From the NCBI RefSeq assembly GCF_006345805.1, contig NC_043020.1, forward strand, positions 5,022,001-5,086,000: a stretch of 64,000 nt of DNA, in the 5' to 3' direction. This stretch comes from Octopus sinensis. Lineage: Eukaryota. How positions within the stretch are numbered: position 1 is the stretch's first letter; the number at the start of each line of letters is the position of its first letter. Made by a program: the position numbers and the translations under genes. Under the pieces are notes generated by a model, which was not told the origin of the DNA, searched no databases, and saw only the letters and a program-made list of their open reading frames with translations. Shown piece by piece: positions 3,124 through 61,219 of the stretch.

Positions 3124-3373
3124 CTCCTTTCATCCTTTTACTTGTTTTAGTCATTAGACTGTGGCTGTGCTGGAAGAATTTTAGTCAGATGAATTTACTC
3201 CAGGAATTACTTTTAAGCCTGGTACTTATTCTATCAGTCCCTTAAGCTGACCCACTGGCTTACAGAGATGTAAACACACCAACACCGGTTGCACAAACAC
3301 CCACAGGCACACGTGTGTATGTATATATGTGCATGCATTTAAGTGTATACATGTGTGTGTGTGTATATATGTG

Positions 3374-3409
<36 letters not shown>

Positions 3410-3449
<40 letters not shown>

Positions 3450-4035
3450 GATAGATAGATAGATAGACAGACAGATATATAGATAGACAGATATATAAAT
3501 AAGACCAAAAGGGTACGGGTGCCGCTATATATATATATATGTAAGAAAATATAAACTGGGACAAGAACGCAAAACATTTAGAAGACGAGACAAAAAACAC
3601 AGACGGGACATTCGAAGCCTTCAATCTTCAGTCAAGAACCGGATCATCTGATTGCTCCGACCTGGCCAGCCCCAAAGGAAAATCTAAGCCAAGCGCATTA
3701 GATTCCTTGGAAGAAAGCCTCGAATGTATACAAAACAAGGACGGAAAAACGGACGATGTTACACGAATAAGAATACAATAGACAGACGGACAGACAGATA
3801 GATAGACAGATAGACAGACAGATAGAAAGACAGACAGATATATAGATAGACAGATAGATAGACAGATAGATAGATAGACAGATAGATAGATAGACAGATA
3901 GATAGATAGACAGATAGACAGAAGGATAGATATGTAGACAGATAGACAGAAGGATAGATATGTAGACAGATAGATAGACAGATAGATAGATAGATATGTA
4001 GACAGATAGATAGATAGATAGATAGATAGATATAA
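3410..4035. repeat. (GATA)/(GACA)n microsatellite blocks flanking a dispersed repeat
   Basis: GATA/GACA arrays at 3410-3490 and 3775-4035. The intervening 3540-3775 is the reverse complement of a repeat at about 42810-43110. Confidence 0.85.
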
Positions 4036-4121
4036 TTGTGCTTCATCCTGAATATTTAACAAAGAAACAATGTGAAGTAAAAAAAAAGTTTCAGAGCATT
4101 AGAAAACATGGTCAAGCTTAC

Positions 4122-4502
4122 ATTGCCCAGATAATTCTTGATAACACTGTTGAAATTCTTCATCAATTATTCTCACTCTTATCTTCGGGTGAAATTTCTG
4201 CTTTATATCTGGTTTGATAAGACACTCCTGGAGAAGGTGGAGAAACTTCCCACTTTTGTACATTTCCCAAAGATCTAACAAACCATTCAGTGTATAGCAA
4301 TGGAACCAGAGATGGATACTTCCATTTGTAATATCAGTAAATGCCCGGTCTTTGCTGCTTAGATTTTCCATAAGTTTGCAAAACTTTATAATGCGCACGT
4401 ATGTGCCATCAAATTGTCTCGCAAACTCTTCATAAGCTTCAGAAGAGTTGTCTTGCCGTTTGATGCTGCAGAGCCATGACTTCAGTACATTACACATCTC
4501 AC
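4122..4502 (-). CDS. 3' part of TRADD-N-like domain exon of the CARD gene (5' part displaced by inversion)
   Basis: EMCNVLKSWLCS...GSIHLWFHCYTLNGLLDLWEMYKSGKFLHLLQECLI...IRVRIIDEEFQQCYQEL. The GSI..C..L..L...Y.SG.L...L pattern resembles invertebrate TRADD-N-like domains. Donor CAAT|GTAAGC at 4121. No phase-compatible acceptor immediately upstream. Confidence 0.65.
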
Positions 4503-4503
4503 G

Positions 4504-4561
4504 AAGCTAGCCGGGTAAGTAGGTAGGCAGATATCTGCCTACCTACTTACCCGGCTAGCTT
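4504..4561. repeat. 58-bp perfect palindrome at inversion breakpoint
   Basis: aagctagccgggtaagtaggtaggcagat|atctgcctacctacttacccggctagctt, centred on GATATC. Confidence 0.97.
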
Positions 4562-5059
4562 TCGTTTCATTTTCATTCAGTCTAGAAACATGCCAACAAC
4601 TACCCAGGAATTTACCTTGGCCTTATCAAGTGAAGGAGAATGCTATTCAACTGTCCACGTGTGCTTGTTCATGTGTGTGGGTGTGTTTGTGTGTATGAAG
4701 GAATCAGCTTGTTTCCTCTCTCTCTGTCTGAACCCTTCCCTGTTGGTGGTACCCTACATTATACCCGCAATCCTCTTCTTCCTGCACAAACGCAACCAGT
4801 TTTAGCTGACTCCCTCCTAACCTAACCTTGGAATATCCATATTTTTGCTACACAACTTAAATCTACACCATTCGATGACCATAATGCTTATACTTACAAC
4901 ACTGCTAACACCAGCTCCTACCTCCAGTGTATTGTGTTATTGTGGTTTTGAAACATAGGAGGAAAACTGTTACTAAAGTTTTCAAATTATGTCTGTGTAT
5001 CTGATTGCTTTTTTTCTGTGGAGAAATTGAGTGTTTTTCTTCTTTTTAAAGGATATTTA

Positions 5060-5395
5060 GTTGTGGTTTATATTTTTAATGATATGCTTTCCTTATTCAA
5101 TTGGAATTGGGTTGAAGTGTTTCCAGTGCATTGATAGAGAGAGACGATTTGGTATTTTGAGTTTATGTTTGCAGGGCATTGGTCTAAGTGTTTGCTTATG
5201 GGAATTTTCCTGGTCATGGGGTCCCAGATTTGTTGCTTGTATACCGTCAGTATGTCCCTCAAGGTCAAACTAGTCTGACCTATGTAGTCTCCATCACACC
5301 CACCATATTTGAGGACATAGAGTAAGTTCTTCAAAGCACAGGTGCTGTTTTTGTCTATTTTCTTGATATTTTGTGGTGGGGAAACTAATAGTAAA
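5060..5395 (-). mobile_element. Penelope-like element GIY-YIG endonuclease remnant
   Basis: STCALKNLLYVLKYGGCDGDYIGQTSLTLR...ISKHLDQC: decayed C..NLIY.I.C..C...YIGQT signature. Confidence 0.75.
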
Positions 5396-5458
5396 TATTT
5401 TAAAACTAAAAAAAAACTAAGAAAAAATACCAAAACAGCCTGTTTATTTTTCTTGCAG

Positions 5459-5648
5459 GGGAGATAAGCAAGCAAGTTGACATTGAGAACTTAGCCAGTT
5501 CTGACAGTAAAGGAAAAGAGTGCTTAAGTGAGATGTGTAATGTACTGAAGTCATGGCTCTGCAGCATCAAACGGCAAGACAACTCTCCTGAAGCTTATGA
5601 AGAGTTTGTGAGACAATTTGATGGCACATACGTGCGCATTATAAAGTT
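5459..5648 (+). pseudogene. Inverted 5' part of the same exon (acceptor plus first 63 codons)
   Basis: tttttcttgcag| phase-1 acceptor, then (G)EISKQVDIENLASSDSKGKECLSEMCNVLKSWLCSIKRQDNSPEAYEEFVRQFDGTYVRIIK. 5528-5648 is the reverse complement of 4382-4502 with 2 mismatches. Confidence 0.8.
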
Positions 5649-6098
5649 GTGTTTGTCTCAGTAGAGAGATAGAGAAAGAGAGAGTGCAGGTAATATGTAG
5701 AGAACAGCACAGTGAGGAGGAGGGTCTGGGAGAATAGACACAGTTAATGGTGGTGGGAGAAAGGATATCCGGTGTACCTCAATATTTAATTATGTCTGGT
5801 TTAGTAACCGATAATTGTACACAATATCTGAAGATCACTAATTCATAATCCAATTAAGGCTCAGGCTTTTTAAATAATATACTTTGAATTAAAAGATCTA
5901 GTAGTCTCAATTTGAATTTCAAACCTAGGGTCAGGATAAGGTCAATCCCATAGCAGTTTTTATAGCAATTCAGGATTCCAAATCCTTCACTCACATTCTT
6001 TGCACGCAAAAATTATAGTAACCTAAGAAAATAATGCTAGCTAAGCCTACATACACTTAGTTCATTTTGAACCATATCTGTGGATGGACCTTGCTTAA

Positions 6099-6645
6099 CC
6101 CTATTTATTTTGAGATGCTGTGTTTCTTTCAATTACTTTAAATATAATAAATAATTTAGTAAAATAACTTAATTATCATTCAGCTCGTGTTAGGAACATA
6201 AATTGTGACTAAGGTTTGGTGGAAGATTTTAATTCAGAACTTTTGAAAACAAGACATTTGTACTACAGAGCCAGATTCAGCCGGGTTAGTAACGAAAGGG
6301 TTAAGAGAAGCTATTTAAGAAAGGAAGAATGATTTTATTGCTGTTGAAGTCATCTTCACCTTTCATATCTTCAACATCAATATTAATGGGACCTGTGAAG
6401 ATTCCACAGAGTGAAAAAGATTAACCCTTTTGTTACCATATTTCTGTTGAGATGCTCTGTGTTTCTTTCGATTGATTTTAAATGTGACAAAGAATTTAGT
6501 AAAATAACTTAGTTATTATTAAGCTAGTGTTAGGAACATAAATTGTGACTAAGGTTTGGTGGAAGATTTTAATTCAAAACTTATGAAAACAAGACATTTG
6601 TACTCAGAGCCAGAGGTGGGTTCAGCCGGGTTGGTATCAAAAGGG
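6099..6645. mobile_element. Two piggyBac-like MITEs (TTAA target, CCCTT...AAGGG ends)
   Basis: TTAA|CCCT...AAAGGG|TTAA at 6099-6300 and 6425-6645 with near-identical internal sequence. A related copy at 58035-58595 is interrupted by an RTE tail. Confidence 0.75.
6360..6392 (-). CDS. Possible 33-nt symmetric micro-exon of the CARD gene
   Basis: cttcacag|GT CCC ATT...ATG AAA G|gtgaag, phase 1 to 1 (GPINIDVEDMK), between two MITEs; weak donor, no homology support. Confidence 0.2.
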
Positions 6646-6981
6646 TTAAAGTTGCAGACTAATAATCAGTTGAAAGTAACTAGATGCAAATGCAATTGCT
6701 CGATGTCTATGCACCAGAAATGTGTTGGATAAGTTTAAAGCAAATATGTTGTACAATTGACTATGGAAATAAAAGAATATGCAGATGTACAAATCTCCAT
6801 ATTCATTGTAATTGTCTTAGATATACACATGGTAAAATATTGATAATCTTGCGAAGCAAACCCAGTATATACCCATTGAATGAAATACAGTGTTAGCCAC
6901 AACCCGGATTATAATCGAGCGCTCAAATGATACCAGCCTGGAGAATCTATCCCCACTTATTCATTATATATATATATGTAT

Positions 6982-7212
6982 GGCGGCAAGCTGGCAGAAA
7001 CGTTAGCACGCCGGGCGAAACGCTTAGCGGTATTTCGTCTGTCGTTACGTTCTGAGTTCATATTCCGCCGAGGTCGACGATGCCTTTCATCCTTTCGGGG
7101 TCGATAAATAAAGTACCTGTGGCGTACTGGGTCTCGATGTAAATCGACTTAATCCCTTTGTCTGTCCTTGTTTGTCCCCTCTGTGTTTAGCCCCTTGTGG
7201 GTAGTAAAGAAA
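6982..7212 (+). mobile_element. tRNA-derived SINE family B; more than 15 full or partial copies in window
   Basis: GGCGGC(G)AGCTGGCAGAAACGTTAGCAC...GTTCTGAGTTCAAATTCCGCCGAGGTCGAC..CTTTCATCCTTTCGGGGTCGATAAA...CCCCTTGTGGGTAGTAAAGAAATA. Also at 9447, 14668-15465, 16855-17258, 18145-18320, 44600-47000 (decayed), 54445, 58957. Confidence 0.9.
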
Positions 7213-7313
7213 TATATATATATATGAATAAATAAATAAATGGAGTTGAACGAAGATGTTAATAAAATTCCTTTACTTTCAACATATGTTTCGAAGACAG
7301 AGAGGCTCCCTTT

Positions 7314-7395
7314 CTTTCCTGATGAGAAGATTGCATCTTACACCGTTTATTCCTTTGGAATAAAACCATGTTGTCTTCGAAACATATGTCGAAAG
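7314..7395 (+). ncRNA. Minimal type I hammerhead ribozyme motif, canonical core
   Basis: Stem I CTTTC/GAAAG; CTGATGA; stem II GAAGA/TCTTC; GAAA; palindromic stem III ACATATGT; GUC cleavage triplet (after 7390). Confidence 0.8.
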
Positions 7396-8154
7396 TAAAA
7401 GAATTTTATTAACATCTTCGTTCAACTCCATTTATTTATTTATTCATATATAACACACAAATTTCTGCACATGAACCCAGAGTTTCTACCTTTGGATAGG
7501 TCGCTTCAACCATGTTTCTGATGTGAATTTGCTACCCTGGTATCGGTTCATCGAATTTTCCATGTTGACAGTAAACATAGGATAATTTATTCACCCATCG
7601 AAATATATATATATATATCTGGTAGTGATAACAATAACACCATACACCTTCTCAAACGTCAATTGTTGATGTCACCTATCTCTAGACCAATGAAATTTTA
7701 CCTCTGATCAGAACCAGATGCTCAGTAAAAAAAACAAACTGACCCTTTAAGAGAATGAACCAACCGGAAAGATTGATCGCCATTCCCTTCAACAAAGTCA
7801 ACCAGGTAGAATGCCAAACTTGACCCCCAGGAAGAATAAGATGTCATAAGAATTATAATGATTCAAAAATTAGGTCCATTCGTGGAAAAACATGTATATA
7901 AACTAATTCCAAAAAGCAGAATGCCATGTATGATAGAAACTGTAAAAACAAACCTTTTTTTTTTTACTCCCTTCTCTTCTTCTTTCTCTCGTCCACATAT
8001 TCTATAATAACTCGTTATGACCAAACTTTCAGTAATCCACATTTTTAATACTCTTTGAAGATCATTTTTGATATTATCTAACTCTGTCATCGAATTCTGT
8101 GAACATTTAACCATGTGCATTTTCAAAAACAAATTCTCCTATATATATCATCAT

Positions 8155-8690
8155 CATCATCATCGTTTACCGTCCGTTTTCCATGCTAGTATAGTTTCGA
8201 TGGTTCAACCGGGGTCTGGGAAGCCAGGAGGCTGGACCAGGCTCCAGTCTGATCTGGCAGTGTTTCTACAGCTGGATGCCCTTCCTAACACCAACCACTC
8301 CGTGAGTGGAGTGGGTGCATTTTACGTGCCACCGGCACAGGTGCCAGGGGAGGCTGGCAACGGCCATGATCAGTTGGTGCATTTTACATGCCACTGGCAC
8401 GGAAGCCAGTCAAGGCGGCTCTGGCATTGGCCATGTTCGGATGGTGCTTTTAACGTGCCACCGGCACAGGTATCACAATTACAATTTCCATTTCATTTTT
8501 TGTTGTTGATGTACTTGACCCAATAGGTCTCCTCAAGCACAGCAGGTCGCCCTACGATCCAAGGTAAGCAGTGCAGGCCGTCCTGCAATCCAAGGCACTT
8601 TAGATGGGCTGAGGCTTCTATGTGAAGCTGGTGCAAGAAATAGCCATTTATATATATATATATATTCCAACCCATGCTAGCATAGAAAAC
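8155..8690 (-). mobile_element. 5'-truncated RTE 3' UTR copies (about 20 in window)
   Basis: GGTGGCACGTAAAAAGCACC...GGCGTTAGGAAGGGCATCCAGCTGTAGAAAC...CATGGAAAACGGACG..(GAT)n. Also near 8700, 10385, 29870, 32690, 39720, 41800, 46360, 51340, 51990, 53635, 55805, 58085, 59621, 60730, 62365, 63262, 63870. Confidence 0.85.
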
Positions 8691-9249
8691 GGACATTAAA
8701 TGTAAAAAGCACCCACTGCACTCATGGAGTGGTTGGCGTTAGGAAGGGCATCCAGCCGTAGAAACATTGCCAGATCAGACTGGGCCTGGTGCAGCCTTCT
8801 GGCTTCCCAGACCCCAGTTGACCTGTCCAACTCATGCCAGCATGGAAAGCGGACGCTAAATGGTGATGATGATGATGATGATGATGATGTATATCATTTT
8901 TTATATTTCACTTTCAGTCGTTGGACTGCAGTCATTCTGGGGCACCACCTTAGCTAAAGAAACTTAAACCAAAACTTATTTTCCCTTCTTCTGTTTAATC
9001 ACTAAGTTAAGGGGATGTAAACAAACCAACAGTAGATTGTCTAGTGGTAGTAAGGGGACAAATGCAAACACACACTCATGTGAATGTGTGTGTGTGAGTG
9101 AGTGGCTTGCTCGCAATTTCATTCTACCAAATTCCCTCACATGGCATTGGTCAGCTTGGGGCTATAGTAGAGGGCAATTGCCCATGGTGCTGTGCACTAG
9201 AACTGAACCCAATGCCATTCAGTTTCAAAGCGAGATTCTTAATCACATA

Positions 9250-10265
9250 ATCATCATCATCATCATATGTCTGTTTTTCATACTGCATGGGTTGGCTGGT
9301 TTGACAGGAGATAACCAACTGAAGAACTGACCAGGCTCCCTGTGTGTTTAGGCAAGGTTTCTATGACTTGATGCCCTTCCTGAAGCCAACCACTTTACAA
9401 AGAGTTCTGGCTGCTTTTATGTGGCACTGGTATAGGTGCTTTTTAAGGCGGCGAGCTGGCAGAAATGTTAGCTCACTAGGTGAAATGCGTAGCCGTATTT
9501 CGTCTGCTGTTACGTTCTGAGTTCAAATTCCGCCGAGGTCGACTTTGCCTTTCATCCTTTCGGGGTCGATAAATTAAGTACCAGTTACGCACTGGGGTTG
9601 ATGTAATCGACTTAATCTGTTTGTCTGTCCTTGTTTGTAACCTCTGTGTCTAGCCCCTTGTGAGTAGTAAAGAAATAGGTATAGGTGCTTTTTACATGAC
9701 ACTAGCACTTGCAAGCCCTCAAGATTAGGGATACTCAACTGAAGAGTGATCTAGGGGACGTGCTTGTATGCAAGGACAACCATGATTTTACATAGCTTGA
9801 TTTGTCACCTCAAGCACAGCAAACCTCTGGGATCTCCTCTATTAGGCCCAATGCCTTAAGATTACTTTCTAACCACTTTATTCCACAATTAGAGACTGGT
9901 ATCACTTGATGCAACCCTTCATTCATATGCATTACATGATTGTACCAGCACAGTCTTCTCTCTTGCACACTACATCTGATGCCTTGTATATCCAGTTTTT
10001 CTCACAAATCACCTACACTCTGTCATATATGCACATTGACATTACCAATCCAGCAGAGCATACTGGCTTCATTTCTCTCAAGTCTCAGTAGTCACAGCCC
10101 GTGTTTCACTGCTATGTAGCATAGCTGTTCATACACAGACGTCATACAACCTACCTTTCACTCTGAGGAAGAGGCCCCTTTGTTACTAGCAGAGGTAGTA
10201 GCTCTCTGAACTTTGCCCATTCTATTCTTATTCTAGCAGTTACGCTTTTGGAACAACATCCAAAG
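9250..10265 (-). mobile_element. RTE-clade LINE 3' remnant with 3' UTR, interrupted by SINE B (9447-9678)
   Basis: ARIRIEWAKFRELLPLLVTKG...VQERRLCWYNHVMHM, running into the GGAAGGGCATCCAG...CCAACCCATGC...(GAT)n tail. Confidence 0.8.
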
Positions 10266-10881
10266 TAACAGAAACTCTCTCTCTTTTACTATTTTACTTG
10301 TTTCAGTCATTTGACTGCGGCCATGCTGGAGCACCGCCTTTAATCGAGCAACTCGACCCCGGGACTTATTCTTTTGTAAAAAGCACTCACTACACTCATG
10401 GAGTGGTTGGCGTTAGGAAGGGCATCCAGCCGTAGAAACATTGCCAGATCAGACTAAGCCTGGTGCAGCCTTCTGGCTTCCCAGACCCCAGTTGCACCGT
10501 CCAACCCATGCCAGCATGGAAAGCGGGCGCTAAATGATGATGATGATGATGATGATATATATATATGTTTCATGTGGGTGTATGTGTGTACATAAGGGTT
10601 TTCTTTACACATGTGGAGGTATAAAGAGGATAAAGATTGAAAATGAACTTGGTATCTTTAACAAGATTTAGTTGCATTTACTTAACCGGTTTCACAATTA
10701 ACTGATTTTCAATAGTAGTGTGAAATGCAAGGAGCTGGAGCTATGTATGCCTCAGTGTGTGTGTGTGTGTGTGTGTGCGTGTGCATGTGTAAAAAAGACA
10801 GAGTGTATGTTTGTAAGGGGAAGTGTTGTGGAGTGTTTATGAAAGAAAGAGTGTGTCTGTATTTGTATGTGAAGAAATTAC

Positions 10882-11416
10882 CTGGTTTCCGTTTTCGATA
10901 CTCGGTAGATGTCAGTAACTTGGCCAAATTCTTTTGCTCAGATCTCTTCAGGGCCTCTACAAGTACACTAAATGCTTTATCTGGCTTGCAGGTCACCAAA
11001 GAAATGAGCATTTCATTCATAGCCATACGGATTCCCTTACTTTTAACTGTGTCCATCTCAGAGATTGTTAATACTTTCTTTGCCAATAAAATATTGAGCA
11101 CTTCATCAGGAATCATATTTTCCACCAATTTCACCAAACAGTCATTCAGGCGCCTCTTGTGTTCTGGACTCATTATCTCTATATCCTCATCTGATGAGTC
11201 ATCAACGTATGGCCTCAGCTGTGAATTGCTCGCATTGTGAAGTTCCTCGGTGACCTGTAAAGTGCCTGATGTACTCGGCAAAGCATTATGGATGCCTGTT
11301 GAAAAGTTCCCTTGCTCAGGAATGCTTGTTACATTTTTCTTTGATCTACATTTACGTACATAATTTTTCTTGTTTCTCTGCGATCGCGAGAGATTCTTCT
11401 TTCTCTTAGATCCCAT
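10882..11416 (-). CDS. CARD (death-fold) protein, first coding exon
   Basis: Acceptor tatctttcag at 11481-11490, 64 nt UTR, ATG at 11416. Basic NLS-like N-terminus, acidic DDSSDEDIE, then helical CARD-like MSPEHKRRLNDCLVKLVENMIPDEVLNILLAKKVLT...FSVLVEALKRSEQKNLAKLL. Donor CCAG|GTAATT, phase 1. The rest of the listed ORF is intronic. Confidence 0.8.
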
Positions 11417-12349
11417 TTCTTTCTATTCTATCACTACCAGCAATGACAGAATTTCTCAAAAGGTTGTAGATTCTGGGTATCTGAAAGATAACCAAAACAA
11501 ATAAATAAATATTGTGAAAAGGGTGGGGAATGAATAGAAGATTGGCCCAGTGGTGAGGATACATAATTCAACGCATACATAAAAAACATACTATAAAAAA
11601 AATTTGAAAATTTATGATTTTTTTTAGCCCCACTCCCTTCCCCCACTTGTTTCTTTACTCTTTACTTGTTTCAGTCATTTGACTGTGGCCATGCTGGAGC
11701 ACCACCTTTAGTCGAGCAAATCAACCCCCAGGACTTATACTTGTAAGCCTAGTACTTATTCTATCAGTCTCTTTTGCTGAACCGCTAAGTTACGGGGACG
11801 CAAACACACCAGCATCGGTTGTCAAACGATGTTGGGGGGACAAACACTGACACACAAACATACTCACACATATATATACATATATACACGACAAGCTTCT
11901 TTCAGTTTCCGTCTACCAAAACCACTCACAAGGTTTTGGTCGGCCCGAGGCTATAGTAGAAGACACTTGCCCAAGGTGCCACACAGTGGACTGAACCCGG
12001 AACCATGAGGTTGGTGAGCAAGCTACTTACCACACAGCCACTACTACTCCTAATATAATTCTAAAATATTGAAGAGCTTGATTAGGTATATCCAGAGTGT
12101 TTTTAAAAAGAGGTAAGTAACACATGATTTATTTTGATAACAATTTTCTGTTAGAAAATGTTTTTTTCTTACAAATACAAGGACTCATTTGGTTGGAAGT
12201 GAGAGTAAAAATTTAAATTACCATTTAAATGCATGTGTTACTTTGGCATCATCATTCCATAAAATGTGTTCATGGGAAGAAAACTAGACAAGATGTCCTT
12301 TTGTACACCCCCAATAACACCCCTTTTCTTTTTTATTTAATTTCTTTTT

Positions 12350-12810
12350 TCTACACAAACCCCCATTTTCGACTAGGGAGAATACGAATCTGCAAAAAAA
12401 TTGGCAAAAATCGGGATTTTGAAATTACACCTCATCCGTTCTTCATTTTTAACTTTTTTCAGAAAGAAATGTTTTTTTTTTCTGGAAAAAATTCCCAAAA
12501 ATTTTTGTAAATTTTTATTTCACAAATTTTTGTTTTGTCAAAATATGCAGAAAAATACAGAGATTACGATTCTGAAAAAATTTACAAAAATTTTTCTAAT
12601 TACAGCTAGGGTTAGGGTTTGAGGGTTAGGGTTTTAGAGATAGGGTTGGGGTTTTAGGGATGGGTTAGGGTTGGGTTTTAGAGTTAGGGTGATGGAAAAA
12701 AGTGAAATATGAAGAAATTGAGGAGAAGGGGTGGGGGCAAAAAATTTCAAAATTCCGATTTTTGCAATTTTCTGGAATCTCCCTATCCAAAAACATGGGG
12801 TTTTGACATA
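12350..12810. mobile_element. Decayed inverted-repeat element with central telomere-like TTAGGG tract
   Basis: 12356-12427 is similar to the reverse complement of 12741-12805; degenerate (TTAGGG/TTGGGG)n at 12605-12690. Confidence 0.55.
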
Positions 12811-12989
12811 AAAAATTTTTTTAAAGAATAATTTGCGAGGAAATTGTGTGGGGGAGAGAGGAAGTCTTTCCGAAAGATATTGAAAAACATCAATAGGTGT
12901 GAGAGTGAGAAAGAAACAAGGAGGGAGATCTTGTGATGTGCTAAAACAACAGCCAGATCTCCCTTACATCACACATTTTCCTCTAAAAA

Positions 12990-13102
12990 TAGGCAATCTT
13001 TCGTTTTAACTCGAAATAATGTAAACACTGAATCGGTCATTTCCGTGACCACATGTTGTCTGTCAATTTGGAAGAGAAAGCTAATGGATTGTGCGATCGT
13101 GC

Positions 13103-13135
<33 letters not shown>

Positions 13136-13652
13136 TTCCTGTGTGTTATTTCAACATTCCACAACAAATACAAAAAAAAAAAAAACAGAACAGACACACA
13201 TATAGGCGCAGGAGTGGCTGTGTGGTAAGTAGCTTGCTTACCAACCACATGGTTCCGGGTTCAGTCCCACTGCGTGACATCTTGGTCAAGTGTCTTCTAC
13301 TATAGCCTCGGGCCAACCAAAGCCTTGTGAGTGGATTTGGTAGACGGAAACTGAAAGAAAGCCGTAGTATATATGTATATATGTGTGTGTGTGTGTGTCT
13401 GTGTTTGTCCCCCTAGCATTGCTTGACAACCGATGCTGGTGTGTTTACGTCCCCGTAACTTAGCGGTTCGGCAAAAGAGACCGATAGAATAAGTACTAGG
13501 CTTACAAAGAATAAGTCCTGGGGGTCGATTTCTTCGACTAAAGGCGGTGCTCCAGCATGGCCGCAGTCAAATGACTGAAACAAGTAAAGAGTAAAGAGTA
13601 TATACACAGAACAAGCAAGCGCTCGCACACACACACTACACAGAGGAACAAG

Positions 13653-16545: not shown

Positions 16546-17084
16546 ACATCCAGAGACCGGTAGAATAAGTACTAGGCTTACAAAGAATAAGTCCTGGGGT
16601 CAATCTGCTCGACTGAAAGCGGTGCTCCAGCATGACCGCAGTCAAATGACTGAAACAAGCAAAAGAAAGAAAGAAATTTCTTCTTTTTTTCCCCCCAATC
16701 ATAGCACGTATGACTGCATGGTTTTCTGTGTCTGTTGCTGCAAAAGGTTCCTCGTAATGAAAGGCATGAATAAATAAAAAATTAAGGGAAAGTATGGCGG
16801 CAATTAAGTCTCAATACAATAAACAATTCAACTATGTCACTGGTTTGGTTTTCAGGCGGCGAGCTGGCAGAAACGTTAGCACACCGGGCGAAATACGTAG
16901 CCGTATTTCGTCTGCCGTTACGTTCTGAGTTCAAATTCCGCCGAGGTCGACTTTGCCTTTAATCCTTTCGGGATCGATAAATTAAGTACCAGTTAGGCAC
17001 TGGGGTCGATGTAATCGACTTAATCCGCTTGTCTGTCCTCTCTGTGTTTAGCCCTTGTGGGCAATAAAGAAATAGGTATTTCGT

Positions 17085-21509: not shown

Positions 21510-22522
21510 TTAATCATCAATGTACTTTCCCTGATTATCTATCACTTCCTTCCATCTATTTACAAGCTTTTTAATCCCATCAATGTAAGACTCTTTTGGT
21601 TTCAAAGCGAAGAACTCTGAAATGTCAGTTTCGACCTCCCCTGGCTTACGAAGTTATGTCCCCAAATGATTCTATAAACTACAAAACAAATGGTAGTCTG
21701 AAGGAGCAATGTCAGGAGAATAAGGTGGATGAGGACTTTTTCCCAACCAAGGTCTCGATCTTCTGTGATGTGATCTTTGCAGTGTGGGGTCACGCATTGT
21801 CCTGATTAAACATCACTCCTTTTCGATTTACTAAAGCAGGTTTTTTTTTCTTCAAAGCTTGGTTCAAACACTCTAATTGCTGACAGTAGACTTGAGCATT
21901 GATTATTGCATTAGGTGGTAACAATTCAAAGTGAATTACTCCTTTGCAATCCCACCAGATAGAGAGAAGAACCTTTTTCCCATGAAATTCCCTTCTCAGT
22001 TGTGGTTGAGCCTTTTCCCTTTTACCAAGCCACTGTTTACGACGTTTAACATTTCGACAGAAGATCCATTTTTCATCACCAGTCACAAGACTATCCAAAA
22101 AGAGTGAAATGAGTTCGCGAGAATGGAGAGAAGAGCAGATGTCAACTCGGGATTTGCAGTTGCTTTCAGACAATTCACAAGGCACCCATTTTCCAATTTA
22201 GGAACCTCCCAAGTTGAAGATGATGCTTTGAACAGTTTATGGTTTGAACTAAGCTTCATTCTTCAATGATAATGCAGGATTTTCTTCAAGTAATGCCTCA
22301 AGGAGCTTATCATCAAACTCAACTGGACGTCCTATTCGATCTCATTCATCTTCAAGGCTGAAATCTCCACTTCTGAATTTTGCAAACCATCTTCTGCAAG
22401 TTCTTTCATTCAAGCATTCTTTCCCATAAACTGAGTGCATATTCGAGTCGCTTCGGCAGCAGAGTTTCTTTTTTGCACTCATAAAGCATTGTGTGCCTCA
22501 AACGCTCTTTGGATACTTCCAT
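21510..22522 (-). mobile_element. Near full-length degenerate mariner (DD34D) transposase
   Basis: MEVSKERLRH; LVTGDEKW; KKVLLSIWWDCKGVIHFELL; QDNA; PYSPDIAPSDYHLF; C-terminal NRWKEVIDNQGKYIDD*; frameshifted. Confidence 0.92.
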
Positions 22523-23529: not shown

Positions 23530-24535
23530 GGGGGGTCAATCGGGTGGCCGGGTGGATCTGTAATTTTTGTAGTTTGCATAGATTTTGTGCATACAGTTTG
23601 GGGAGTGTTCCGAGATCTTGTTGAGGAGAGGGCCTTTAGCGAATAAGATCTCCAAGCTCTCAGAAATGCAAAGGTCACAGCAAGTGTGGCCTCCCGTGTA
23701 AGAACGCGCTCTCTGGAGTAGTCTCCACTTGATCTTGAAGGGGATGGAGTTTCTTTTAAGGTGCCAGATATGGGCGGCGAGAGTAGTCGGGTTAGATTTG
23801 TCAGGTCGCCAGAACGAATGTGTGTGGGCGTACCAGCGAGTCTTAAAACTATTTGAGGTCATTCCGATGTACGATTTTCTTTTATCATCGGGGCCTGATC
23901 GTACATCGCATATGTAGACGAGATCTTTCTGTAGGCAGTTGTTGTTGAGGGTCAAGTAGTCTTATCAGGGCAATTGCAGTTGCTGTCGGATGCTGGATGG
24001 GCTTCGGAAAAAGTAGATTTATTAAGTTTTTTGACATTGTTGGCTAGGTTCCTAGCTAGATTGGGTGTGGTGGAGTAGGAGTGTCTAATGGTGTTCTTAT
24101 TAAGGATTGTATAGTACTTATGTTGGGTGGGGAAGTGTTTTTGTAAGAGAGTGAAGAAAATTTTAGCTACAGGTGTTGAAACTTCACGGTTGTACCAGCT
24201 AATGTGTCTTCACCTATTATTCTTGGGTGGGCGTGGGGCTATGCTAATGTAGGTTATCTTATCTCTAAAGCCACTGCGGGCCAGGGCCTCGTTGTAATAG
24301 AGGGCTGCGGCATTAAAGATATCCTCGGTGGAAGAGAGGCTAGATATCCTAATGGAGACACTTTTCACTAAGTTGTCTAATATATTTTTGGGGTGGTTAG
24401 AATTAATGTCTATATATCTAAGGGATTCATTAGGTTTATGGTACGGGTAATAAAGGGAGGTTTCTAAATCGAGGGTAACGTCAAGGAAGTTAGCTTTGGT
24501 TAAGTTCGAATCTAAGGTAATCCTAAAGCCTTAGT
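23530..24535 (-). mobile_element. Penelope-like element, 5'-truncated (RT C-terminus plus GIY-YIG)
   Basis: ANFLDVTLDLETSLYYPYHKPNESLRYIDINSNHP...NCNC; CLQKDLVYICDV...SYIGMTSNSFKTRWYAHTHSF...CDLCISE. Confidence 0.92.
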
Positions 24536-24564: not shown

Positions 24565-27295
24565 TTGTGTGTGCTACATATCGCTGTCCAGATGCCCCAA
24601 GTCATATGGGCAAGTTTGAGGACTGCCTTTTAAAAATAGAAGAAGTTCTAATCACATTAGAACAACACATAAGTGTACTTCTCATGGGAGACTTCAATCT
24701 ACCCAATGTCAGATGGCCCGAGGGCCTTTCTCTCCCAGGAATGACAAGATGTGAACGAGGACAGGCGAGGTCCCTCTGAACCTCATCAACACCCTGTACA
24801 TGGAGCAAGTAATACTCCAACCAACCAGAGCAGGTAACACACTGGATCTCTGCTTCACAAATAATATGGATCTCATCCATAATGTGAAAGTGACACCGAC
24901 AATACTCTCGGATCACAACATGGTAGAGCTGACCATGTACGGGCCAAAAGAGAGCACGGACATGCAGCCTACAAGAAACCCTCAGAATCTTTCCAGCTTG
25001 AACTTCAATAAGGCAAACTGGAAACAAATTGAGAAAGAGATCCTCAAACAAAACTGGCCTGAATGTCTCTCCTCGCCGGACATCGACATGATACTTCAAC
25101 AATTCATGTCTGTAATGCAAGCCATATGCTACAAATGTGTCCCAGAGAGAAAGGCCACTGTACACAAGAACAAAATCCCCAGAGAGAGGAAAATTTTAAT
25201 GAGACGGCGTACAAAAATTTCAAATCGCCTAAACAAACAAATTGAAAGCAGTGAAAAGTCCCGCCTGAAAATAAAACTGTTAGAAATTGAAAATTGTCTG
25301 CAACTCTCCATGAGAAGGAGAGAGAGAGAGCAGACAAAGAAGCCTGGGCTATAGACAACATAAAAACTAACCCCAGAGCTTTCTACAGGTATGCCAAAGA
25401 AACAGCTACGGTGCACTGTAGGATAGGGCCACTCTTGAAAAGGATGGCACACTCACAGGAAAACCAATGAGGGTAAGTGAAATACTGAATGAACAATTCA
25501 AGAGTGTTTTCACCCCACCCCTTGGGCATTTCCAAATCAGCAATCCAACTGACTTCTTTTTCCACTGCAGATATAGAATCAGAGGCGGCGACGATAAATT
25601 ACATCGATATAAAGGAAGACGATGTAATAAAGGCTATAGATGAAATGAAAAACAGACTCAGCTATTGGCCCCGATGGATTCCGGCAATCCCCCTAAAAGT
25701 ATGTAAGAGAGTCCTAGCAAGACCACTGCAGTTCTTCTTTCAGAGCTTCCTTGCAGCTGGCAAACTTCCAAGAAAACTGAAGGAAGGTAAAATATTCCTA
25801 TTCATAAAGGAGGTAGCAGAGCGGAGGCCAAGAACTACAGACCTATCTCTCTGACTCACACATCAGCAAGGTCATGGAACGAATAGTTAGAAGGAAACTA
25901 ATCACCTTCCTTGAAGAAAATGACTTGCTGCCTGACACCCAACATGGTTCCGACCAGGAAGAAGCTGCTTAACTCAGCTCCTGCAGCACTATGACTGGGT
26001 GCTGAAACAACTGCTCAACCACTCAAATGTGGAAGTCATATATCTCGACTTCGCAAAGGCCTTCGATAAAGTCGATCATGGAATGATATGTCACAAACTG
26101 CGTGATCTTGTCATAGTTGGAAAACTAGGAGAATGGCTTCATGACTTTCTAAAGAATAGAAGTCAGGTGGTAGCAGCCATTAGCACGCAAATTATGAGCG
26201 GTGTTCCACAGGGCACTGTTTTGGGACCACTACTGTTCATAATGGCCCTCTCAGACATGCCCTCAGCCACGCGGAGAGCCACGATCACAAGTTATGCAGA
26301 TGATACAAAAGTTTCACTGGCAATACAGAACCCTGAAGACACTAAGCACCTGCAATGTGAGCTAGACAAAATATACAAGTGGGCCGAAAAGAATAGCATG
26401 CAGTTCAATGCTGAAAAGTTTCAAGCTTTATACTATCAGCATGCAAAACTAAATGCAATACCCAATGAATACACTGGACCCGGAGGAATAGCAATCCCAG
26501 AGGCACAATCAGTGCGTGACCTAGGTATTTACATGAGTGATGACGCGACCTTTCGTGTACATGTTGCTAAATTGGCAATGAAATGTAGACGACTGGCCGG
26601 ATGGATCCTCAGAACCTTTAGAAAAGAGAACAAGAAACCATGATGGTCCTCTGGAGGACACTTGTCCTAAGCCACTTTGACTACTGCTCTCAGTTATGGT
26701 CACCATCCAGTGTCAAGTTGATCACAGAGCTCGAGGCGATCCAACGTAGCTACACGAAGAAGATAGCCTCTATGCAGAATGTAAGCTACTGGGAAAGACT
26801 CAGGAAATTAAAATTATATTCCCTGGAGCGTAGGCGGGAAAGATATGCCATAATATACATCTGGAAGATCCTGGAGGGAAGTGTCCTGAACTTTGGCATC
26901 GAGAGTTACGCAAATGCCAGAACTGGGCGCCACTGCGTGGTGCCTAGGACTCCAAACTTGCCATCAAGATGTAGGACAAGATTCTGTGATAGCCTGGGCT
27001 TCCGAGGCCCACAGCTCTTCAATATCCTCCCGAAGAACCTGAGAGACCTGCATGGGATGGATACAGATGTCTTTAAAATGAGGCTGGATCTCTTCCTGTC
27101 GGGTGTCCCAGATGAACCAACTTCACGGCAGGAGGGGCAGATGAGGGCAGCTGCATCGAACTCTCTCATGCACCAAATAGCAGCTGCTAGAAAGCCTTCA
27201 TGAAGTGAAACCAAGTAGCAACACCAAATGGCGGTGCCCCAGCATGGCCACAGCTCATAAGCTGAAACTGGAAAAATTAAAAATCAAAAATCAAA
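24565..27295 (+). mobile_element. CR1/L2-type LINE ORF2 (APE endonuclease plus RT), frameshifted, 5'-truncated
   Basis: APE: LLMGDFNLP, QPTRAGNTLDL, SDHNMV. RT: YLDFAKAFDKVDH, GVPQGTVLGPLLF, YADDTK. C-terminus YCSQLWSP...LERRRERY. 3' stem-loop tail at 27230-27269. Confidence 0.95.
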
Positions 27296-52267: not shown

Positions 52268-52990
52268 CTTTATAATTAGGGTTCAGCAACGATTTGCTTC
52301 ACCACATACCGAAATCGTTGCTGTACCCTATTTATAAAGTATTACTTAAGCTTACCATGAAATGGTCCTTTTCATGCTGAATTCTACTTGGTGAAATTAT
52401 TGATTACTTCTTAATTAATTAGTTTCACCCTTTGTTATTATTATTATTATTATTATTCTTATTATTATTATATATATATATATATATAAGCTTAAAAGCC
52501 ATCTAAGTTATTAAGCTAATATGTAGCTTTTCAGTAACTAACCCTGAATGGGAAGAGCTGCAAATGGATCTCTGACTTGTTTCGAAGAATTTGTTGCAGT
52601 TGCTTTCTCCAGAGTCATATCCCAATGATGATCATATTCGTCGCTAAAAATCAGGTAAAAGAAATCGAGTTCTATATTAAAGAGATGACGAATTATGTAC
52701 ATTATTTACATTTGACGGATATTTGTCCTCATCTTGTTTGTTGTTAACACAACGTTTTTGGCTGATATACCCTCCAGCCTTCATCAAGTGTCTTGGGGAA
52801 ATTTCAAACCTGGGTTCTCATTCCTAAGGTATTTTTCGATGTTGTCGCCGCCGCAAAGTGGCCGAAGACTTTTGCATGGTACTGTATGTACATATTTCTG
52901 TCTGCACCCATCCCCTCCGTCCTTAAGGAAATTTCCATGATACTCTGTAAAGTTTGTTCCATTATCTATCACTTCTCTTCCTTCTTTCAG

Positions 52991-53096
52991 TCTGCTGTGA
53001 ATTTCAGCACCACAAACTCTCTGGATGCCCAATTCTATGAATCAGTTGAAGAAATTGTTTCAGACATCCCAGACGGTGCTAAACTTTTGGTAGGAG
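52991..53096 (+). CDS. OXCT1: OXCT1 exon 2
   Basis: cttctttcag| SAVNFSTTNSLDAQFYESVEEIVSDIPDGAKLLVG G|gtgagt; 106 bp, phase 0 to 1; typical SCOT N-terminus. Confidence 0.95.
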
Positions 53097-56000: not shown

Positions 56001-56218
56001 ACAGGTGCCAGGCGAGGCTGGCAACGGCTACGGTCGGATTGGTGTATTTTATGTGCCACCGGCACGGAAGCCAGTCGAGGCGGCGCTGGCATCGGCCACG
56101 AGTCGGATAGTGCTTTTTACGTACCACCAGGCCAGGGATCCTGGCTGGTTCAATTCGATTCGATGGAAATGGATAAAGAAATCCTCAAGTCTCATGGTTA
56201 TTTGTAATTCTCTTTCAG

Positions 56219-56352
56219 GGTTTGGTCTTTGTGGAATTCCTGAGAATTTGATTGATGGTCTGCTAAAAAGTAAAGTGAAAGATTTAACTGTCGTCAGCAA
56301 CAATGCTGGTGTCGATGATTTCGGACTTGGCTTGCTGCTCAAACAGAAACAG
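56219..56352 (+). CDS. OXCT1: OXCT1 exon 3
   Basis: tctttcag| (G)[44 protein letters not shown] |gtgagt; GGFGLCGIP and SNNAG motifs of class I CoA-transferase alpha domain; 134 bp. Confidence 0.97.
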
Positions 56353-56599
56353 GTGAGTCTTAACGATGTGTTAATTAACCTGTTGTTTAATGTGTGTTGT
56401 TTGTCTGGTAAGAAGTTTGTTTCACACCCACCTGGTTCCAAGTTCAGTCGTGCTACATGGTACCTCGGGCAAGTATCTTCTACTATAGCTCTGGGCCGAC
56501 CAAAGCCTTGTGAGTTGATTTAGTAGACAGAAACTGAAAGAAGCCCATTGTATGTATATGTGTGTGTGTGTGTTTGGTGGGGTCTTTGTGTCAGTGATT

Positions 56600-61177: not shown

Positions 61178-61219
61178 GTAAGTGTCTCTCTCTCTGTCTC
61201 TCTTATACACCCTTCCACT

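What the first reader, a model, noticed from the sequence alone, without database searches (positions are those of the whole stretch)
4382..5648. Invertible exon segment in a death-fold gene: current orientation breaks the exon, flipping restores it
Seen: 4382-4502 and 5528-5648 are 121-bp inverted copies of coding sequence (2 mismatches, S/P and A/V). The acceptor and 5' end of the exon lie on the + strand (5459 onward), while its 3' end and donor lie on the - strand (4502 to 4122). The displaced acceptor is phase 1, matching the CARD exon donor (...RKRKP-G-EISKQ...). Inverting 4503-5527 between the repeats gives an intact acceptor and uninterrupted exon in gene orientation. Inference: either a staggered-break inversion that inactivated this allele, or a recurrent ON/OFF inversion polymorphism. 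In the ON state the intronic antisense copy could pair with the exon as an ADAR substrate, which is relevant in cephalopods. Mis-assembly is the main alternative.
Basis: partly seen in the sequence, partly recalled or inferred. Interest (0 to 1): 0.75.

Follow-up and report, generated by a model that had tools for sequence, protein, structure and literature searches.

The report
Old fold-back inversion breaking a CARD-gene exon
In one copy of a tandemly repeated octopus immune-type (CARD) gene, the front of exon 2 was flipped millions of years ago; the same scar occurs in sister copies and in a second octopus species, so it is a real but fixed gene-breaking rearrangement, not an on/off switch or an assembly error.

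Summary
4382-4502 and 5528-5648 are inverted copies of exon-2 coding sequence, and flipping 4503-5527 in silico rebuilds a 450-nt, phase-1/1 exon collinear with intact relatives.

The window is Octopus sinensis CM016882.1:5,022,001-5,086,000, gene LOC115223936 (CARD plus a TRADD-N-like exon). It is one unit of a tandem family.

Two O. vulgaris units have the ancestral order: distal intron, CAGGTT, a 29-nt sequence (p2), an antisense Penelope-like-element fragment, 117 bp of intron, then exon 2. In the window the 1,113-bp block 4533-5645 is reversed. A second p2 copy forms a perfect spacer-less 58-bp palindrome (4504-4561) beside the retained exon part.

The distal junction is base-for-base identical in four units from two species, assembled from PacBio and from Nanopore reads. 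Two units share a 1,168-bp deletion starting inside the palindrome. Inverted and intact classes differ by 1.4-2.0% in the block.

So this is one event, older than the species split (2.5 Mya per the O. vulgaris genome paper). No unit shows a flipped-back state. Annotated transcripts skip exon 2 in frame.

Verdict: an ordinary, well-resolved structural mutation. The switch idea is unsupported, mis-assembly is essentially excluded, and the ADAR idea is untested.

The parts
10883..11416 (-). Exon 1 coding part (CARD domain). The exon ends at 10882 with one extra G (phase 1); the donor GT is at 10881-10880.
   Evidence: Pfam CARD PF00619, E=1.3e-15, 57.5 bits against a cutoff of 23.9. 100% identical to the N-terminus of LOC115223936 isoforms. 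Donor context.
5646..5651 (.). Junction J1: distal intron flank joined to the end of the inverted exon copy. 'GTT/AAC' is 3-nt microhomology. The ancestral CAGGTT is missing here.
   Evidence: Intact O. vulgaris units read ...GAGACAAACACAAC|CAGGTT|ATCTGCC.... The window, L002, L003 and L005-ii all read ...GAGACAAACACAAC|TTTATAATGCG....
5528..5648 (+). R': the copy of the middle of exon 2, now antisense to the gene (right arm of the inverted repeat).
   Evidence: The same inverted copy is present in L002, L003 and L005-ii.
5459..5527 (+). First 69 nt of exon 2 (GEISKQVDIENLASSDSKGKECLS), now on the wrong strand.
   Evidence: Translation. tblastn of intact relatives. Alignment.
5342..5458 (+). 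Last 117 nt of intron 1, with the polypyrimidine tract and AG acceptor (5457-5458), inverted together with the exon start.
   Evidence: Orthologous to the stretch of O. bimaculoides L001 that begins at 11441 (the match 5342-5647 = L001 11441-11760) in + orientation, while the flanks match in - orientation.
4562..5341 (-). 5'-truncated Penelope-like retroelement fragment (decayed C-terminal GIY-YIG endonuclease ORF at about 5068-5367, plus the 3' region). It was already in the intron before the inversion.
   Evidence: The ORF hits 346 proteins. In the long hits (620-756 aa) the match lies at the C-terminus, and most of those scanned carry Pfam RVT_1 plus a C-terminal GIY-YIG domain. The fragment is present at the same place, in the ancestral orientation, in intact units L004 and L005-i. 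It is absent from O. bimaculoides L001.
4504..4561 (.). Perfect 58-bp palindrome with no spacer (centre 4532|4533, GAT|ATC). 4533-4561 is p2 as part of the inverted block; 4504-4532 is the second p2 copy in gene orientation. With a 1-nt T slip the symmetry extends 3 nt further.
   Evidence: Intact units carry only one p2. L002 and L003 keep the first 39 nt, including the centre. It is unique in the window.
4503..4503 (.). Junction J3: a single base between the palindrome and the retained exon part. It can also be read as p2 continuing TT(T)CGT with GT microhomology to the exon.
4382..4502 (-). R: the middle of exon 2 in gene orientation (left arm of the inverted repeat).
4122..4381 (-). Remaining 3' part of exon 2 in gene orientation, up to the donor (GT at 4121-4120). 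It encodes the conserved TRADD-N-like core (…KDRAFTDITNGSIHLWFHC…QELSGQ).
   Evidence: Identical to the first 83 aa of Gnomon isoform X8 (P0004). 98-100% identical to intact paralogues outside the variable patch. Weak Pfam TRADD-like_N hit, E=0.018.
3348..4515 (.). The 1,168-bp stretch deleted in paralogue L2 (O. sinensis LOC115224053) and in O. vulgaris L003: part of the palindrome, R, the rest of exon 2 and the intron-2 microsatellite.
   Evidence: The deletion junction ...ATCTGCCTAC|ACTTAAATG... is identical in L002 and L003.

Best explanation
**What it is.** This is the scar of a single old structural mutation in one lineage of a tandemly repeated CARD / TRADD-N-like gene family of the Octopus vulgaris-sinensis clade.

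**Ancestral and derived order.** The ancestral order, still present in two O. vulgaris units, is: distal intron 1, CAGGTT, p2 (29 nt), an antisense Penelope-like-element fragment, the last 117 nt of the intron, then exon 2 (E5-R-A). In the derived units the block S = [p2 ... R] (window 4533-5645, 1,113 bp) lies reversed. It is followed in gene orientation by a second p2, one base, and then R-A.

**How it arose (inferred).** The simplest reading is a fold-back, head-to-head inverted copy of S made at a broken or stalled fork. It was joined to the distal flank through 3-nt microhomology with loss of CAGGTT. In the same multi-template-switch event, or soon after, 966 bp (the element fragment, the intron end and the first 69 nt of the exon) were lost from the sense arm, through a GT microhomology. 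This leaves only the two ends of that arm: the 29-33-nt p2, which forms the 58-bp palindrome, and the 121-nt R, which forms the inverted repeat. On paper this is the same as an inversion with duplications at both ends.

**What it does now.**
- Exon 2 has no acceptor in gene orientation and cannot be spliced.
- Because exon 2 is 450 nt and phase 1/1, skipping it is in frame. Annotated products join the CARD exon directly to exon 3 and lack the TRADD-N-like part.
- The residual palindrome kept causing damage: a 1,168-bp deletion starts inside it in another unit.

**Shown versus inferred.** Shown: the structure, the ancestral state, single origin, an age older than the species split, and the absence of any revertant among the six units read. 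Inferred: the replication/fold-back mechanism, and that transcripts really skip the exon, which rests on gene models only.
For: **Locus identity.** The window overlaps L006 = CM016882.1 with 0 mismatches over 21,416 nt.

**Ancestral state.**
- O. bimaculoides LOC106877111 has an intact exon 2.
- O. vulgaris units L004 and L005-i have exon 2 intact. There, 4532-5646 lies in the opposite orientation to the window relative to its flanks.
- Nucleotide-level junctions are given.

**Real, not an artefact.**
- J1 is identical in the window, L002 (a second O. sinensis unit 67 kb away with no N gap between them), L003 and L005-ii (O. vulgaris).
- The palindrome centre is present in L002 and L003.
- The assemblies are independent: PacBio plus Hi-C for O. 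sinensis; ONT, 10x and Omni-C for O. vulgaris.

**Single origin and age.**
- In the S block the inverted units differ from one another by 0.14-0.57%.
- The two intact units differ from each other by 0.14%.
- The two classes differ by 1.43-2.00%, whereas the adjacent Y flank shows no class structure.
- L002 and L003 share the same deletion junction and a private A>C change.
- The species split is dated at 2.5 Mya and the split from O. bimaculoides at about 34 Mya, per PMC10700109.
- The element fragment is absent in O. bimaculoides and present in intact units.

**Mechanism hints.**
- 3-nt AAC microhomology at J1.
- A 33-nt templated stretch with a 1-nt slip.
- GT microhomology at J3.

**Consequence.**
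- Exon 2 is 450 nt with phase 1/1.
- Gnomon and ENA models read RKRKP|AFEGNK in the inverted units (P0002, P0003, P0155, P0156), whereas the intact units give RKRKPGEIS... (P0157, P0158).
Against: - Junction J3 (palindrome-R) and the full inverted repeat are seen only in the window unit. No second assembly of that exact unit was found.
- The palindrome has no central spacer. [quoted passage not shown] A covalently closed hairpin end, or an exact U-turn, has to be assumed.
- No unit preserves the postulated full 2.2-kb palindrome intermediate.
- The window unit and L2 are identical over 2.7 kb, and L2 abuts an assembly gap. They might be two haplotypes rather than paralogues. This changes the counting but not the conclusion.
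- Exon skipping rests on gene models, not on reads that I could inspect.
Confidence: 0.85

Rival explanations
1. Classical two-break inversion of 4533-5645. One break would be a 118-121-nt staggered cut across R, filled in to give the inverted repeat. The other would be a break at CAGGTT|p2 whose end was sealed as a hairpin and reopened 29 nt off-centre. That gives the palindrome as a very long 'P-nucleotide' tract, followed by end joining with 1 nt added. The end product and consequences are the same as the best explanation; only the origin differs.
For: Inverted duplications of single-copy sequence at inversion breakpoints are common and are explained this way in Drosophila: 17 of 29 inversions (PMC1885836). 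A spacer-less perfect palindrome is what hairpin opening produces. The final sequence fits exactly.
Against: The staggered-break model puts each duplicated stretch at opposite ends of the inversion. Here both p2 copies sit together at one junction. A 29-nt off-centre hairpin opening is far longer than usual footprints (my own knowledge). No hairpin-forming transposase, or trace of a cut-and-paste element, is seen at the site. The 1-nt slip plus 3 further matching bases at J3 look more like copying than ligation.
Confidence: 0.3
2. Recurrent ON/OFF inversion. The 121-bp arms recombine and flip 4503-5527 back and forth, in the germ line or in somatic cells, turning exon 2 on and off.
For: Both arms are still 98% identical, and flipping restores a perfect exon in silico. 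One site (4443/5587) has a distribution among units that could reflect arm-to-arm gene conversion.
Against: No unit in either species shows the flipped state with an upstream antisense arm. The intact units are ancestral: CAGGTT is present, and there is no R' and no second p2. They are 1.4-2.0% diverged from the inverted class in the block, so the two classes have not been exchanging. Three of the four inverted units have lost an arm. Apart from the decayed GIY-YIG remnant, no enzyme-like ORF was noticed inside the segment, though no systematic recombinase scan was run. 121 bp is short for efficient homologous inversion in animals (my own knowledge).
Confidence: 0.04
3. Assembly artefact: a chimeric long read or local mis-join created the inverted block in the O. 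sinensis assembly.
For: The window unit is the only place where the palindrome-R junction is seen. PacBio CLR assemblies can contain fold-back chimeras (my own knowledge). The neighbouring L2 unit ends at an assembly gap.
Against: J1 is identical in four units and the palindrome centre in three, across two species and two sequencing technologies. The arms differ by substitutions, and the R' copies in other units carry their own shared variants. The L2/L003 deletion runs from inside the palindrome to intron 2, which presupposes the palindrome-R-A-intron 2 order seen in the window. Beyond 29 nt the palindrome flanks are unrelated, unlike a missed-adapter fold-back.
Confidence: 0.02

Closest known systems
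Inversions flanked by inverted duplications of breakpoint sequence (staggered-break model; Ranz et al. 2007, PMC1885836)
   Same: An ancestrally single-copy stretch, here 118-121 nt of exon 2, ends up as inverted copies at the two ends of a reversed segment. No repeat pre-existed at the breakpoints. A gene is disrupted at the breakpoint.
   Different: The scale is about 1.1 kb, inside one gene, instead of chromosomal. The second duplicated stretch (p2) is not at the opposite end but next to its partner, forming a spacer-less palindrome. A 966-bp loss has to be assumed if the event is read as a duplication.
Fold-back inversions / inverted duplications made through hairpins or fork U-turns (e.g. 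PMC3907307, PMC7467729) and multi-template-switch (FoSTeS/MMBIR-type) rearrangements
   Same: Head-to-head copy, 2-3-nt microhomologies at the other junctions, a short (33-nt) templated stretch between switches with a 1-nt slip, and later instability at the palindrome centre.
   Different: There is no spacer at the symmetry centre, whereas hairpin loops usually leave one. Only the two ends of the second arm survive. The event is germ-line, fixed and millions of years old, rather than somatic or pathological.
Invertible DNA switches (bacterial phase-variation invertons, shufflons, yeast 2-micron FLP)
   Same: A segment bounded by inverted repeats whose flipping would change what is expressed. 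Here one orientation gives a complete exon.
   Different: Only one orientation is seen wherever the repeats exist. No recombinase or recombination site was seen. The repeats are a by-product of the mutation, and most copies have already lost one arm.
Domain loss by exon disruption in tandem innate-immune gene families (CARD/Death/TRADD-N adaptor expansions in invertebrates; Kaur et al. 2021, PMC8195603, for the TRADD-N domain)
   Same: A lineage-specific tandem array, mosaic gene conversion between units, one hypervariable patch, and some units degenerating.
   Different: Here the lesion is resolved to the base and shared between species. The TRADD-N assignment itself is only weak for this unit.

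Membership tests
Invertible DNA switch | Segment bounded by inverted repeats | tested here: met
   Arms of 121-124 nt, 98% identical, 1,025 nt apart.
Invertible DNA switch | Both orientations found between the same repeats (in copies, individuals or cells) | tested here: not met
   Six units in two species were read. All four repeat-bearing or repeat-derived units have the same orientation. The two intact units lack the repeats and keep the CAGGTT lost at the breakpoint. Individuals and tissues could not be tested.
Invertible DNA switch | Dedicated recombinase and/or specific recombination sites | tested here: inconclusive
   The only enzyme-like ORF noticed in the segment is a decayed retroelement GIY-YIG endonuclease remnant. 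The whole window was not scanned systematically for recombinases.
Invertible DNA switch | One orientation yields a functional product | tested here: met
   The in-silico flip gives an open 450-nt exon with acceptor and donor. It aligns to intact relatives with no frame-disrupting gaps (gap-free against the O. vulgaris paralogues).
Staggered-break inversion with inverted duplications | Segment reversed relative to the ancestral order | tested here: met
   4532-5646 has the opposite orientation in intact units L004 and L005-i, and 5342-5647 has the opposite orientation in O. bimaculoides.
Staggered-break inversion with inverted duplications | Each duplicated breakpoint stretch lies at opposite ends of the inverted segment | tested here: not met
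   This holds for R but not for p2. Both p2 copies abut each other at one junction.
Fold-back inverted duplication / template-switch rearrangement | Head-to-head copies meeting at a symmetry centre | tested here: met
   rc(p2)|p2 at 4532|4533, with the full inverted arm on one side.
Fold-back inverted duplication / template-switch rearrangement | Short non-duplicated spacer at the centre (hairpin loop) | tested here: not met
   The palindrome is perfect with a 0-nt spacer. Compare the loop sizes reported.
Fold-back inverted duplication / template-switch rearrangement | Microhomology and/or small templated insertions at the remaining junctions | tested here: met
   AAC at J1. A 29-33-nt p2 stretch with a 1-nt slip, and GT at J3.
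Fold-back inverted duplication / template-switch rearrangement | Whole arm present twice | tested here: not met
   Only 29-33 nt and 118-121 nt of the sense arm remain. A 966-bp loss must be assumed. No unit keeps the intermediate.
CARD-domain protein | Pfam CARD match above the curated cutoff | tested here: met
   PF00619, 57.5 bits against a cutoff of 23.9, E=1.3e-15, residues 88-170.
TRADD-N-like domain protein | Pfam TRADD-like_N (PF20694) match above the cutoff in exon 2 | tested here: inconclusive
   The restored exon scores 15.3 bits against a cutoff of 23.7, E=0.018. The family is on record for the O. bimaculoides orthologue and a Biomphalaria relative.
Penelope-like retroelement (fragment 4562-5341) | Reverse transcriptase followed by a C-terminal GIY-YIG endonuclease | tested here: met
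   The window has only the endonuclease end, because the fragment is 5'-truncated. In the long proteins it hits (620-756 aa) the match lies at the C-terminus, and most of those scanned carry RVT_1 plus a C-terminal GIY-YIG domain. The fragment itself has no Pfam hit.
Penelope-like retroelement (fragment 4562-5341) | Terminal repeats with a hammerhead ribozyme motif | tested here: not met
   There is no hammerhead match in 3900-7000 even at E<=10. The palindrome gives only sub-threshold miRNA-like hairpin hits.

The most novel reading that the evidence does not exclude
The scar may have acquired a regulatory role. Every pre-mRNA of the inverted units carries, in intron 1, an antisense copy of the exon-2 start. 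In the window unit it also carries a 121-bp near-perfect duplex and a 27-29-bp perfect hairpin. These could be ADAR or small-RNA substrates that act in cis, or in trans on the intact paralogues, whose first 69 nt of exon 2 are 96-100% identical. Alternatively, the remaining arms might still allow rare re-inversion that resurrects a W-type exon 2 carrying its own hypervariable patch.
Probability: 0.06. Interest if true: 0.7.

Novelty: new member of a known kind. Interest (0 to 1): 0.28.

Why it matters
**For the scan.** An attractive 'invertible exon' turns out to be a fixed mutation scar, and the assembly is right. The decisive evidence was paralogues and a sister species, not the window itself.

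**For biology, modest interest:**
- It is a clean, base-resolved example of how a small fold-back or inversion event removes a domain from one member of an expanding innate-immune adaptor family while leaving an in-frame CARD-only product.
- It shows a residual palindrome continuing to seed deletions.
- It shows a reversed block escaping the gene conversion that homogenises its flanks.

**For annotators.** LOC115223936 and LOC115224053 (O. sinensis), and the O. vulgaris models, are fused or truncated around this lesion.

Tried and rejected
1. **Sequencing adapter or missed-adapter fold-back as the source of the palindrome.** Rejected: beyond 29 nt the flanks are unrelated, and half of the palindrome is native sequence in intact units.
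2. **Hammerhead or other known RNA motif in or near the palindrome.** Rfam gave only sub-threshold miRNA-like hairpin hits and no hammerhead.
3. **Single-step retroelement insertion (target-primed reverse transcription from a nick in the exon) creating the structure.** Rejected: the element fragment sits at the same place, in the ancestral orientation, in intact units, so it predates the inversion.
4. **A larger or double inversion including the SINE at 8886-9100.** This was suggested by its opposite orientation to a look-alike in O. bimaculoides. Rejected: that region is collinear in intact and inverted units and its flanks are not orthologous.
5. **A paralogue within the window as the source of the second arm.** None exists; the region 4503-6097 is single-copy in the window apart from the arms.
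6. **Pfam on the element ORF.** No hit. The element was identified instead through an exhaustive protein search.
7. **Look-ups that found nothing:** the window ORF 4099-4497, and isoforms X8, X9 and X3. The third homologue search, with an exon-2 alignment, returned no scored hit. As a result I could not list intact O. sinensis paralogues, nor an O. vulgaris counterpart of the window unit.
8. **Polarising the arm mismatches with O. bimaculoides.** This was informative at only one site. The O. vulgaris units helped more.
Full report
**1.
- The repeat finder reports arms 4379-4502 and 5528-5651, 124 nt, 98% complementary, 1,025 nt apart.
- The + strand from 5459 reads ...ttcttgcag|GGGAGATAAGC, giving GEISKQVDIENLASSDSKGKECLSEMCNVLK....
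- The - strand from 4502 to 4122 reads EMCNVLKSWLC...QELSGQ followed by gtaagc.
- The upstream ORF 11416-10883 (-) is a CARD domain: Pfam PF00619, E=1.3e-15. It ends ...CCA G|gtaatt, in phase 1.
- Flipping 4503-5527 in silico gives an open 450-nt exon with acceptor and donor.

**2. Where the window comes from.**
- The restored protein hits O. bimaculoides LOC106877111 (68% identity, full length, intact exon 2, with Pfam CARD plus TRADD-like_N on record). It also hits O. sinensis models that contain only the CARD exon or only the 3' exon part.
- The window overlaps locus L006 with no mismatch over 21,416 nt. It is therefore CM016882.1:5,022,001-5,086,000 of GCA_006345805.1, gene LOC115223936.
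- The broken exon gives only a weak TRADD-like_N hit (E=0.018, below the cutoff). 'Death-fold' therefore applies to exon 1 only.

**3. The gene is one unit of a tandem family, and other units tell the story.**
- A second O. sinensis unit (L002, LOC115224053) lies 67 kb downstream on the same strand, with no N gap between them. It is 98.5-99.4% identical to the window.
- O. vulgaris OX597837.1 has at least four units:
  - L005-i and L004 have an intact exon 2. Their products P0157 and P0158 read ...RKRKPGEISVQVD...QELSGQSFE....
  - L005-ii and L003 carry the inverted exon start.
- In the intact units the order in gene orientation is...GAGACAAACACAAC | CAGGTT | ATCTGCCTACCTACTTACCCGGCTAGCTT (p2) | TCGTTTC... 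(window 4562-5341 in + orientation) | last 117 nt of intron 1 | exon 2.
- In the window the block 4533-5645 (1,113 bp) is reversed. The distal flank ...CACAAC now runs straight into the reverse complement of the exon middle. CAGGTT is gone. After the reversed p2 comes a second p2 in gene orientation, then one base, then the exon middle and 3' part.

**4. The insert between the arms.**
- Window 4562-5341 has no counterpart in the O. bimaculoides locus.
- Its - strand carries a decayed ORF (5068-5367) that hits 346 proteins. In the long hits (620-756 aa) the match lies at the C-terminus, and most of those scanned have RVT_1 plus a C-terminal GIY-YIG domain. This is the architecture of Penelope-like retroelements.
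- The fragment sits at the same place in the intact units. It was therefore an ordinary intronic insertion that predates the rearrangement. It is not its cause and not filler.

**5. Real, single, old.**
- The distal junction is identical to the base in the window, L002, L003 and L005-ii.
- L002 and L003 keep the first 39 nt of the palindrome, including its centre. They then share one deletion junction (...ATCTGCCTAC|ACTTAAATG...) that removes the equivalent of window 3348-4515.
- L005-ii has a different, roughly 10-kb deletion starting at the equivalent of 4828.
- The two assemblies were made from different animals and different technologies: PacBio plus Hi-C, and ONT plus 10x plus Omni-C (PMC10700109).
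- Within the block, inverted units differ by 0.14-0.57% and intact units by 0.14%, but the two classes differ by 1.43-2.00%. The adjacent flank shows 0.15-0.96% with no class structure.
- Hence there was one event, older than the O. sinensis / O. vulgaris split (2.5 Mya). It is younger than the element insertion, which is absent in O. bimaculoides (about 34 Mya).
- The reversed block has since been shielded from the gene conversion that homogenises its surroundings.

**6. No sign of switching.**
- A flip between the arms would give an intact exon with an antisense arm and the palindrome upstream. No unit looks like that.
- The intact units retain CAGGTT, have one p2 and no upstream arm, and belong to the other sequence class. 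They are ancestral, not revertants.
- Three of the four inverted units have lost the second arm.
- The only hint of arm-to-arm exchange is site 4443/5587. T occurs in the window's R and in the R' of L002 and L003. C occurs in the window's R', in L005-ii, in the intact units and in O. bimaculoides. A parallel change explains this equally well.

**7. How it probably arose (inference).** The derived sequence can be written as: distal flank | reverse complement of S | p2 (+TT(T)CGT with a 1-nt slip) | R-A, where S = p2...R.
- *Favoured reading.* This is what is left if a head-to-head copy of S was made at a broken or stalled fork. It would have been joined to the distal flank by AAC microhomology. 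The sense arm would then have lost 966 bp between p2 and R through a GT microhomology, either as a third template switch or as a later deletion driven by the large palindrome.
  - This accounts for the inverted repeat and the palindrome with one logic.
  - It also fits the later palindrome-anchored deletion in L2/L003.
- *Alternative reading.* A two-break inversion with a 118-121-nt staggered cut (model of PMC1885836) and a hairpin-sealed end opened 29 nt off-centre gives the same product. However, it places p2 at the wrong junction for the pure model.
- *Difficulty for simple snap-back priming.* The palindrome has no spacer, whereas such priming leaves loop-sized spacers (PMC7467729).
- I put about 0.5 on the template-switch / fold-back origin and about 0.3 on break-and-rejoin.

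**8. What it does now.**
- In gene orientation, exon 2 has no acceptor.
- The exon is 450 nt with phase 1/1, so skipping it is in frame. All gene models for inverted units read RKRKP|AFEGNK... (P0002, P0003, P0155, P0156). One model starts inside the surviving 3' part (P0004).
- The likely net effect is a CARD protein without the TRADD-N-like part. This rests on models only.
- The pre-mRNA is predicted to fold into a duplex of about 120 bp plus a 27-bp perfect hairpin. Editing or small-RNA processing is possible but untested.

**9. Comparison and verdict.**
- The closest known kinds are inversions with inverted breakpoint duplications and fold-back / template-switch rearrangements. This case matches most features of each and fails one (see the membership table).
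- It fails the key test for an invertible switch.
- It is a new, nicely resolved member of a known kind of mutation. Interest is low to moderate.
- Remaining uncertainties:
  - J3 is seen in one unit only.
  - The window unit and L2 could be haplotypes rather than paralogues: 0.00% divergence over 2.7 kb, and L2 abuts a gap.
  - No reads or transcripts could be inspected.

Noticed in passing
window 4350-4502 (and 5528-5648); L004 15451-15600; L001 ~11640-11800: A hypervariable patch of about 150 bp inside exon 2. The window type differs from the intact O. vulgaris type at 35 of 141 nt (25%), while the rest of the exon differs by 0-2%. O. bimaculoides is equally distant from both. The window-type patch exists only in broken units among those read. 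This suggests diversifying selection or old cassette-like lineages.
   Followed up: partly
L002 16889-16896; L003 ~16899-16906 (equivalent to window 3348-4515): An identical 1,168-bp deletion in one O. sinensis unit and one O. vulgaris unit. It starts 10 nt past the palindrome centre and ends in the intron-2 microsatellite, with TAC/ACTTA microhomology. This is an example of palindrome-associated deletion, and it is shared across species.
   Followed up: yes
window 9700-13600 vs L002: The window unit and the L2 unit are identical (0.00%) over the CARD exon plus 2.2 kb upstream, and 0.09% apart in the proximal intron, but 0.4-0.6% apart elsewhere. CARD exons group by neighbourhood, not by inversion state. 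The L2 unit runs into an N gap (L002 26249-26348). This could be concerted evolution or a haplotypic duplication in the assembly.
   Followed up: partly
window 8886-9100; L001 11192-11407: A SINE-like element 88.6% identical to one in the same intron of O. bimaculoides, but in the opposite orientation and with non-orthologous flanks. It has the same orientation in inverted and intact units, so it is unrelated to the inversion. It is probably an independent insertion of the same subfamily.
   Followed up: yes
L006 10001-63912; L003 10001-66032; L005 10001-89392: Gene models in both species fuse several neighbouring CARD genes (up to four CARD domains in one product). In O. vulgaris they carry misleading names ('kinesin-related protein 4-like', 'type III domain-containing 3B').
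   Followed up: no
window 3330-4040: A long compound (GATA)n/(GACA)n/(TA)n microsatellite in intron 2, about 80 nt downstream of the exon-2 donor. It forms one end of the L2/L003 deletion.
   Followed up: no
window 7129-8446: About 1.3 kb of intron 1 present in the window, L002, L003, L005-i and L005-ii but absent from O. vulgaris unit L004. The stretch is repeat-rich. This is an indel polymorphism between units.
   Followed up: no
window 52793-56523 (+): Exon-like ORFs that look by eye like a CoA-transferase (OXCT1/SCOT-like), consistent with the PF01144 gene next to the CARD gene in O. bimaculoides. The spacer is about 41 kb here against about 10 kb in O. bimaculoides, and is filled with repeats.
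   Followed up: no
window 24800-27203 (+); 21790-22185 (-); 23536-23955 (-); 61182-62014 (+): Other mobile-element remains, judged by eye from the ORF translations and not scanned unless stated. There is a non-LTR-type reverse-transcriptase ORF series containing YADD, and a transposase-like fragment. A second, unrelated GIY-YIG-like ORF gave no Pfam hit. There is also a long, nearly perfect tandem array.
   Followed up: no
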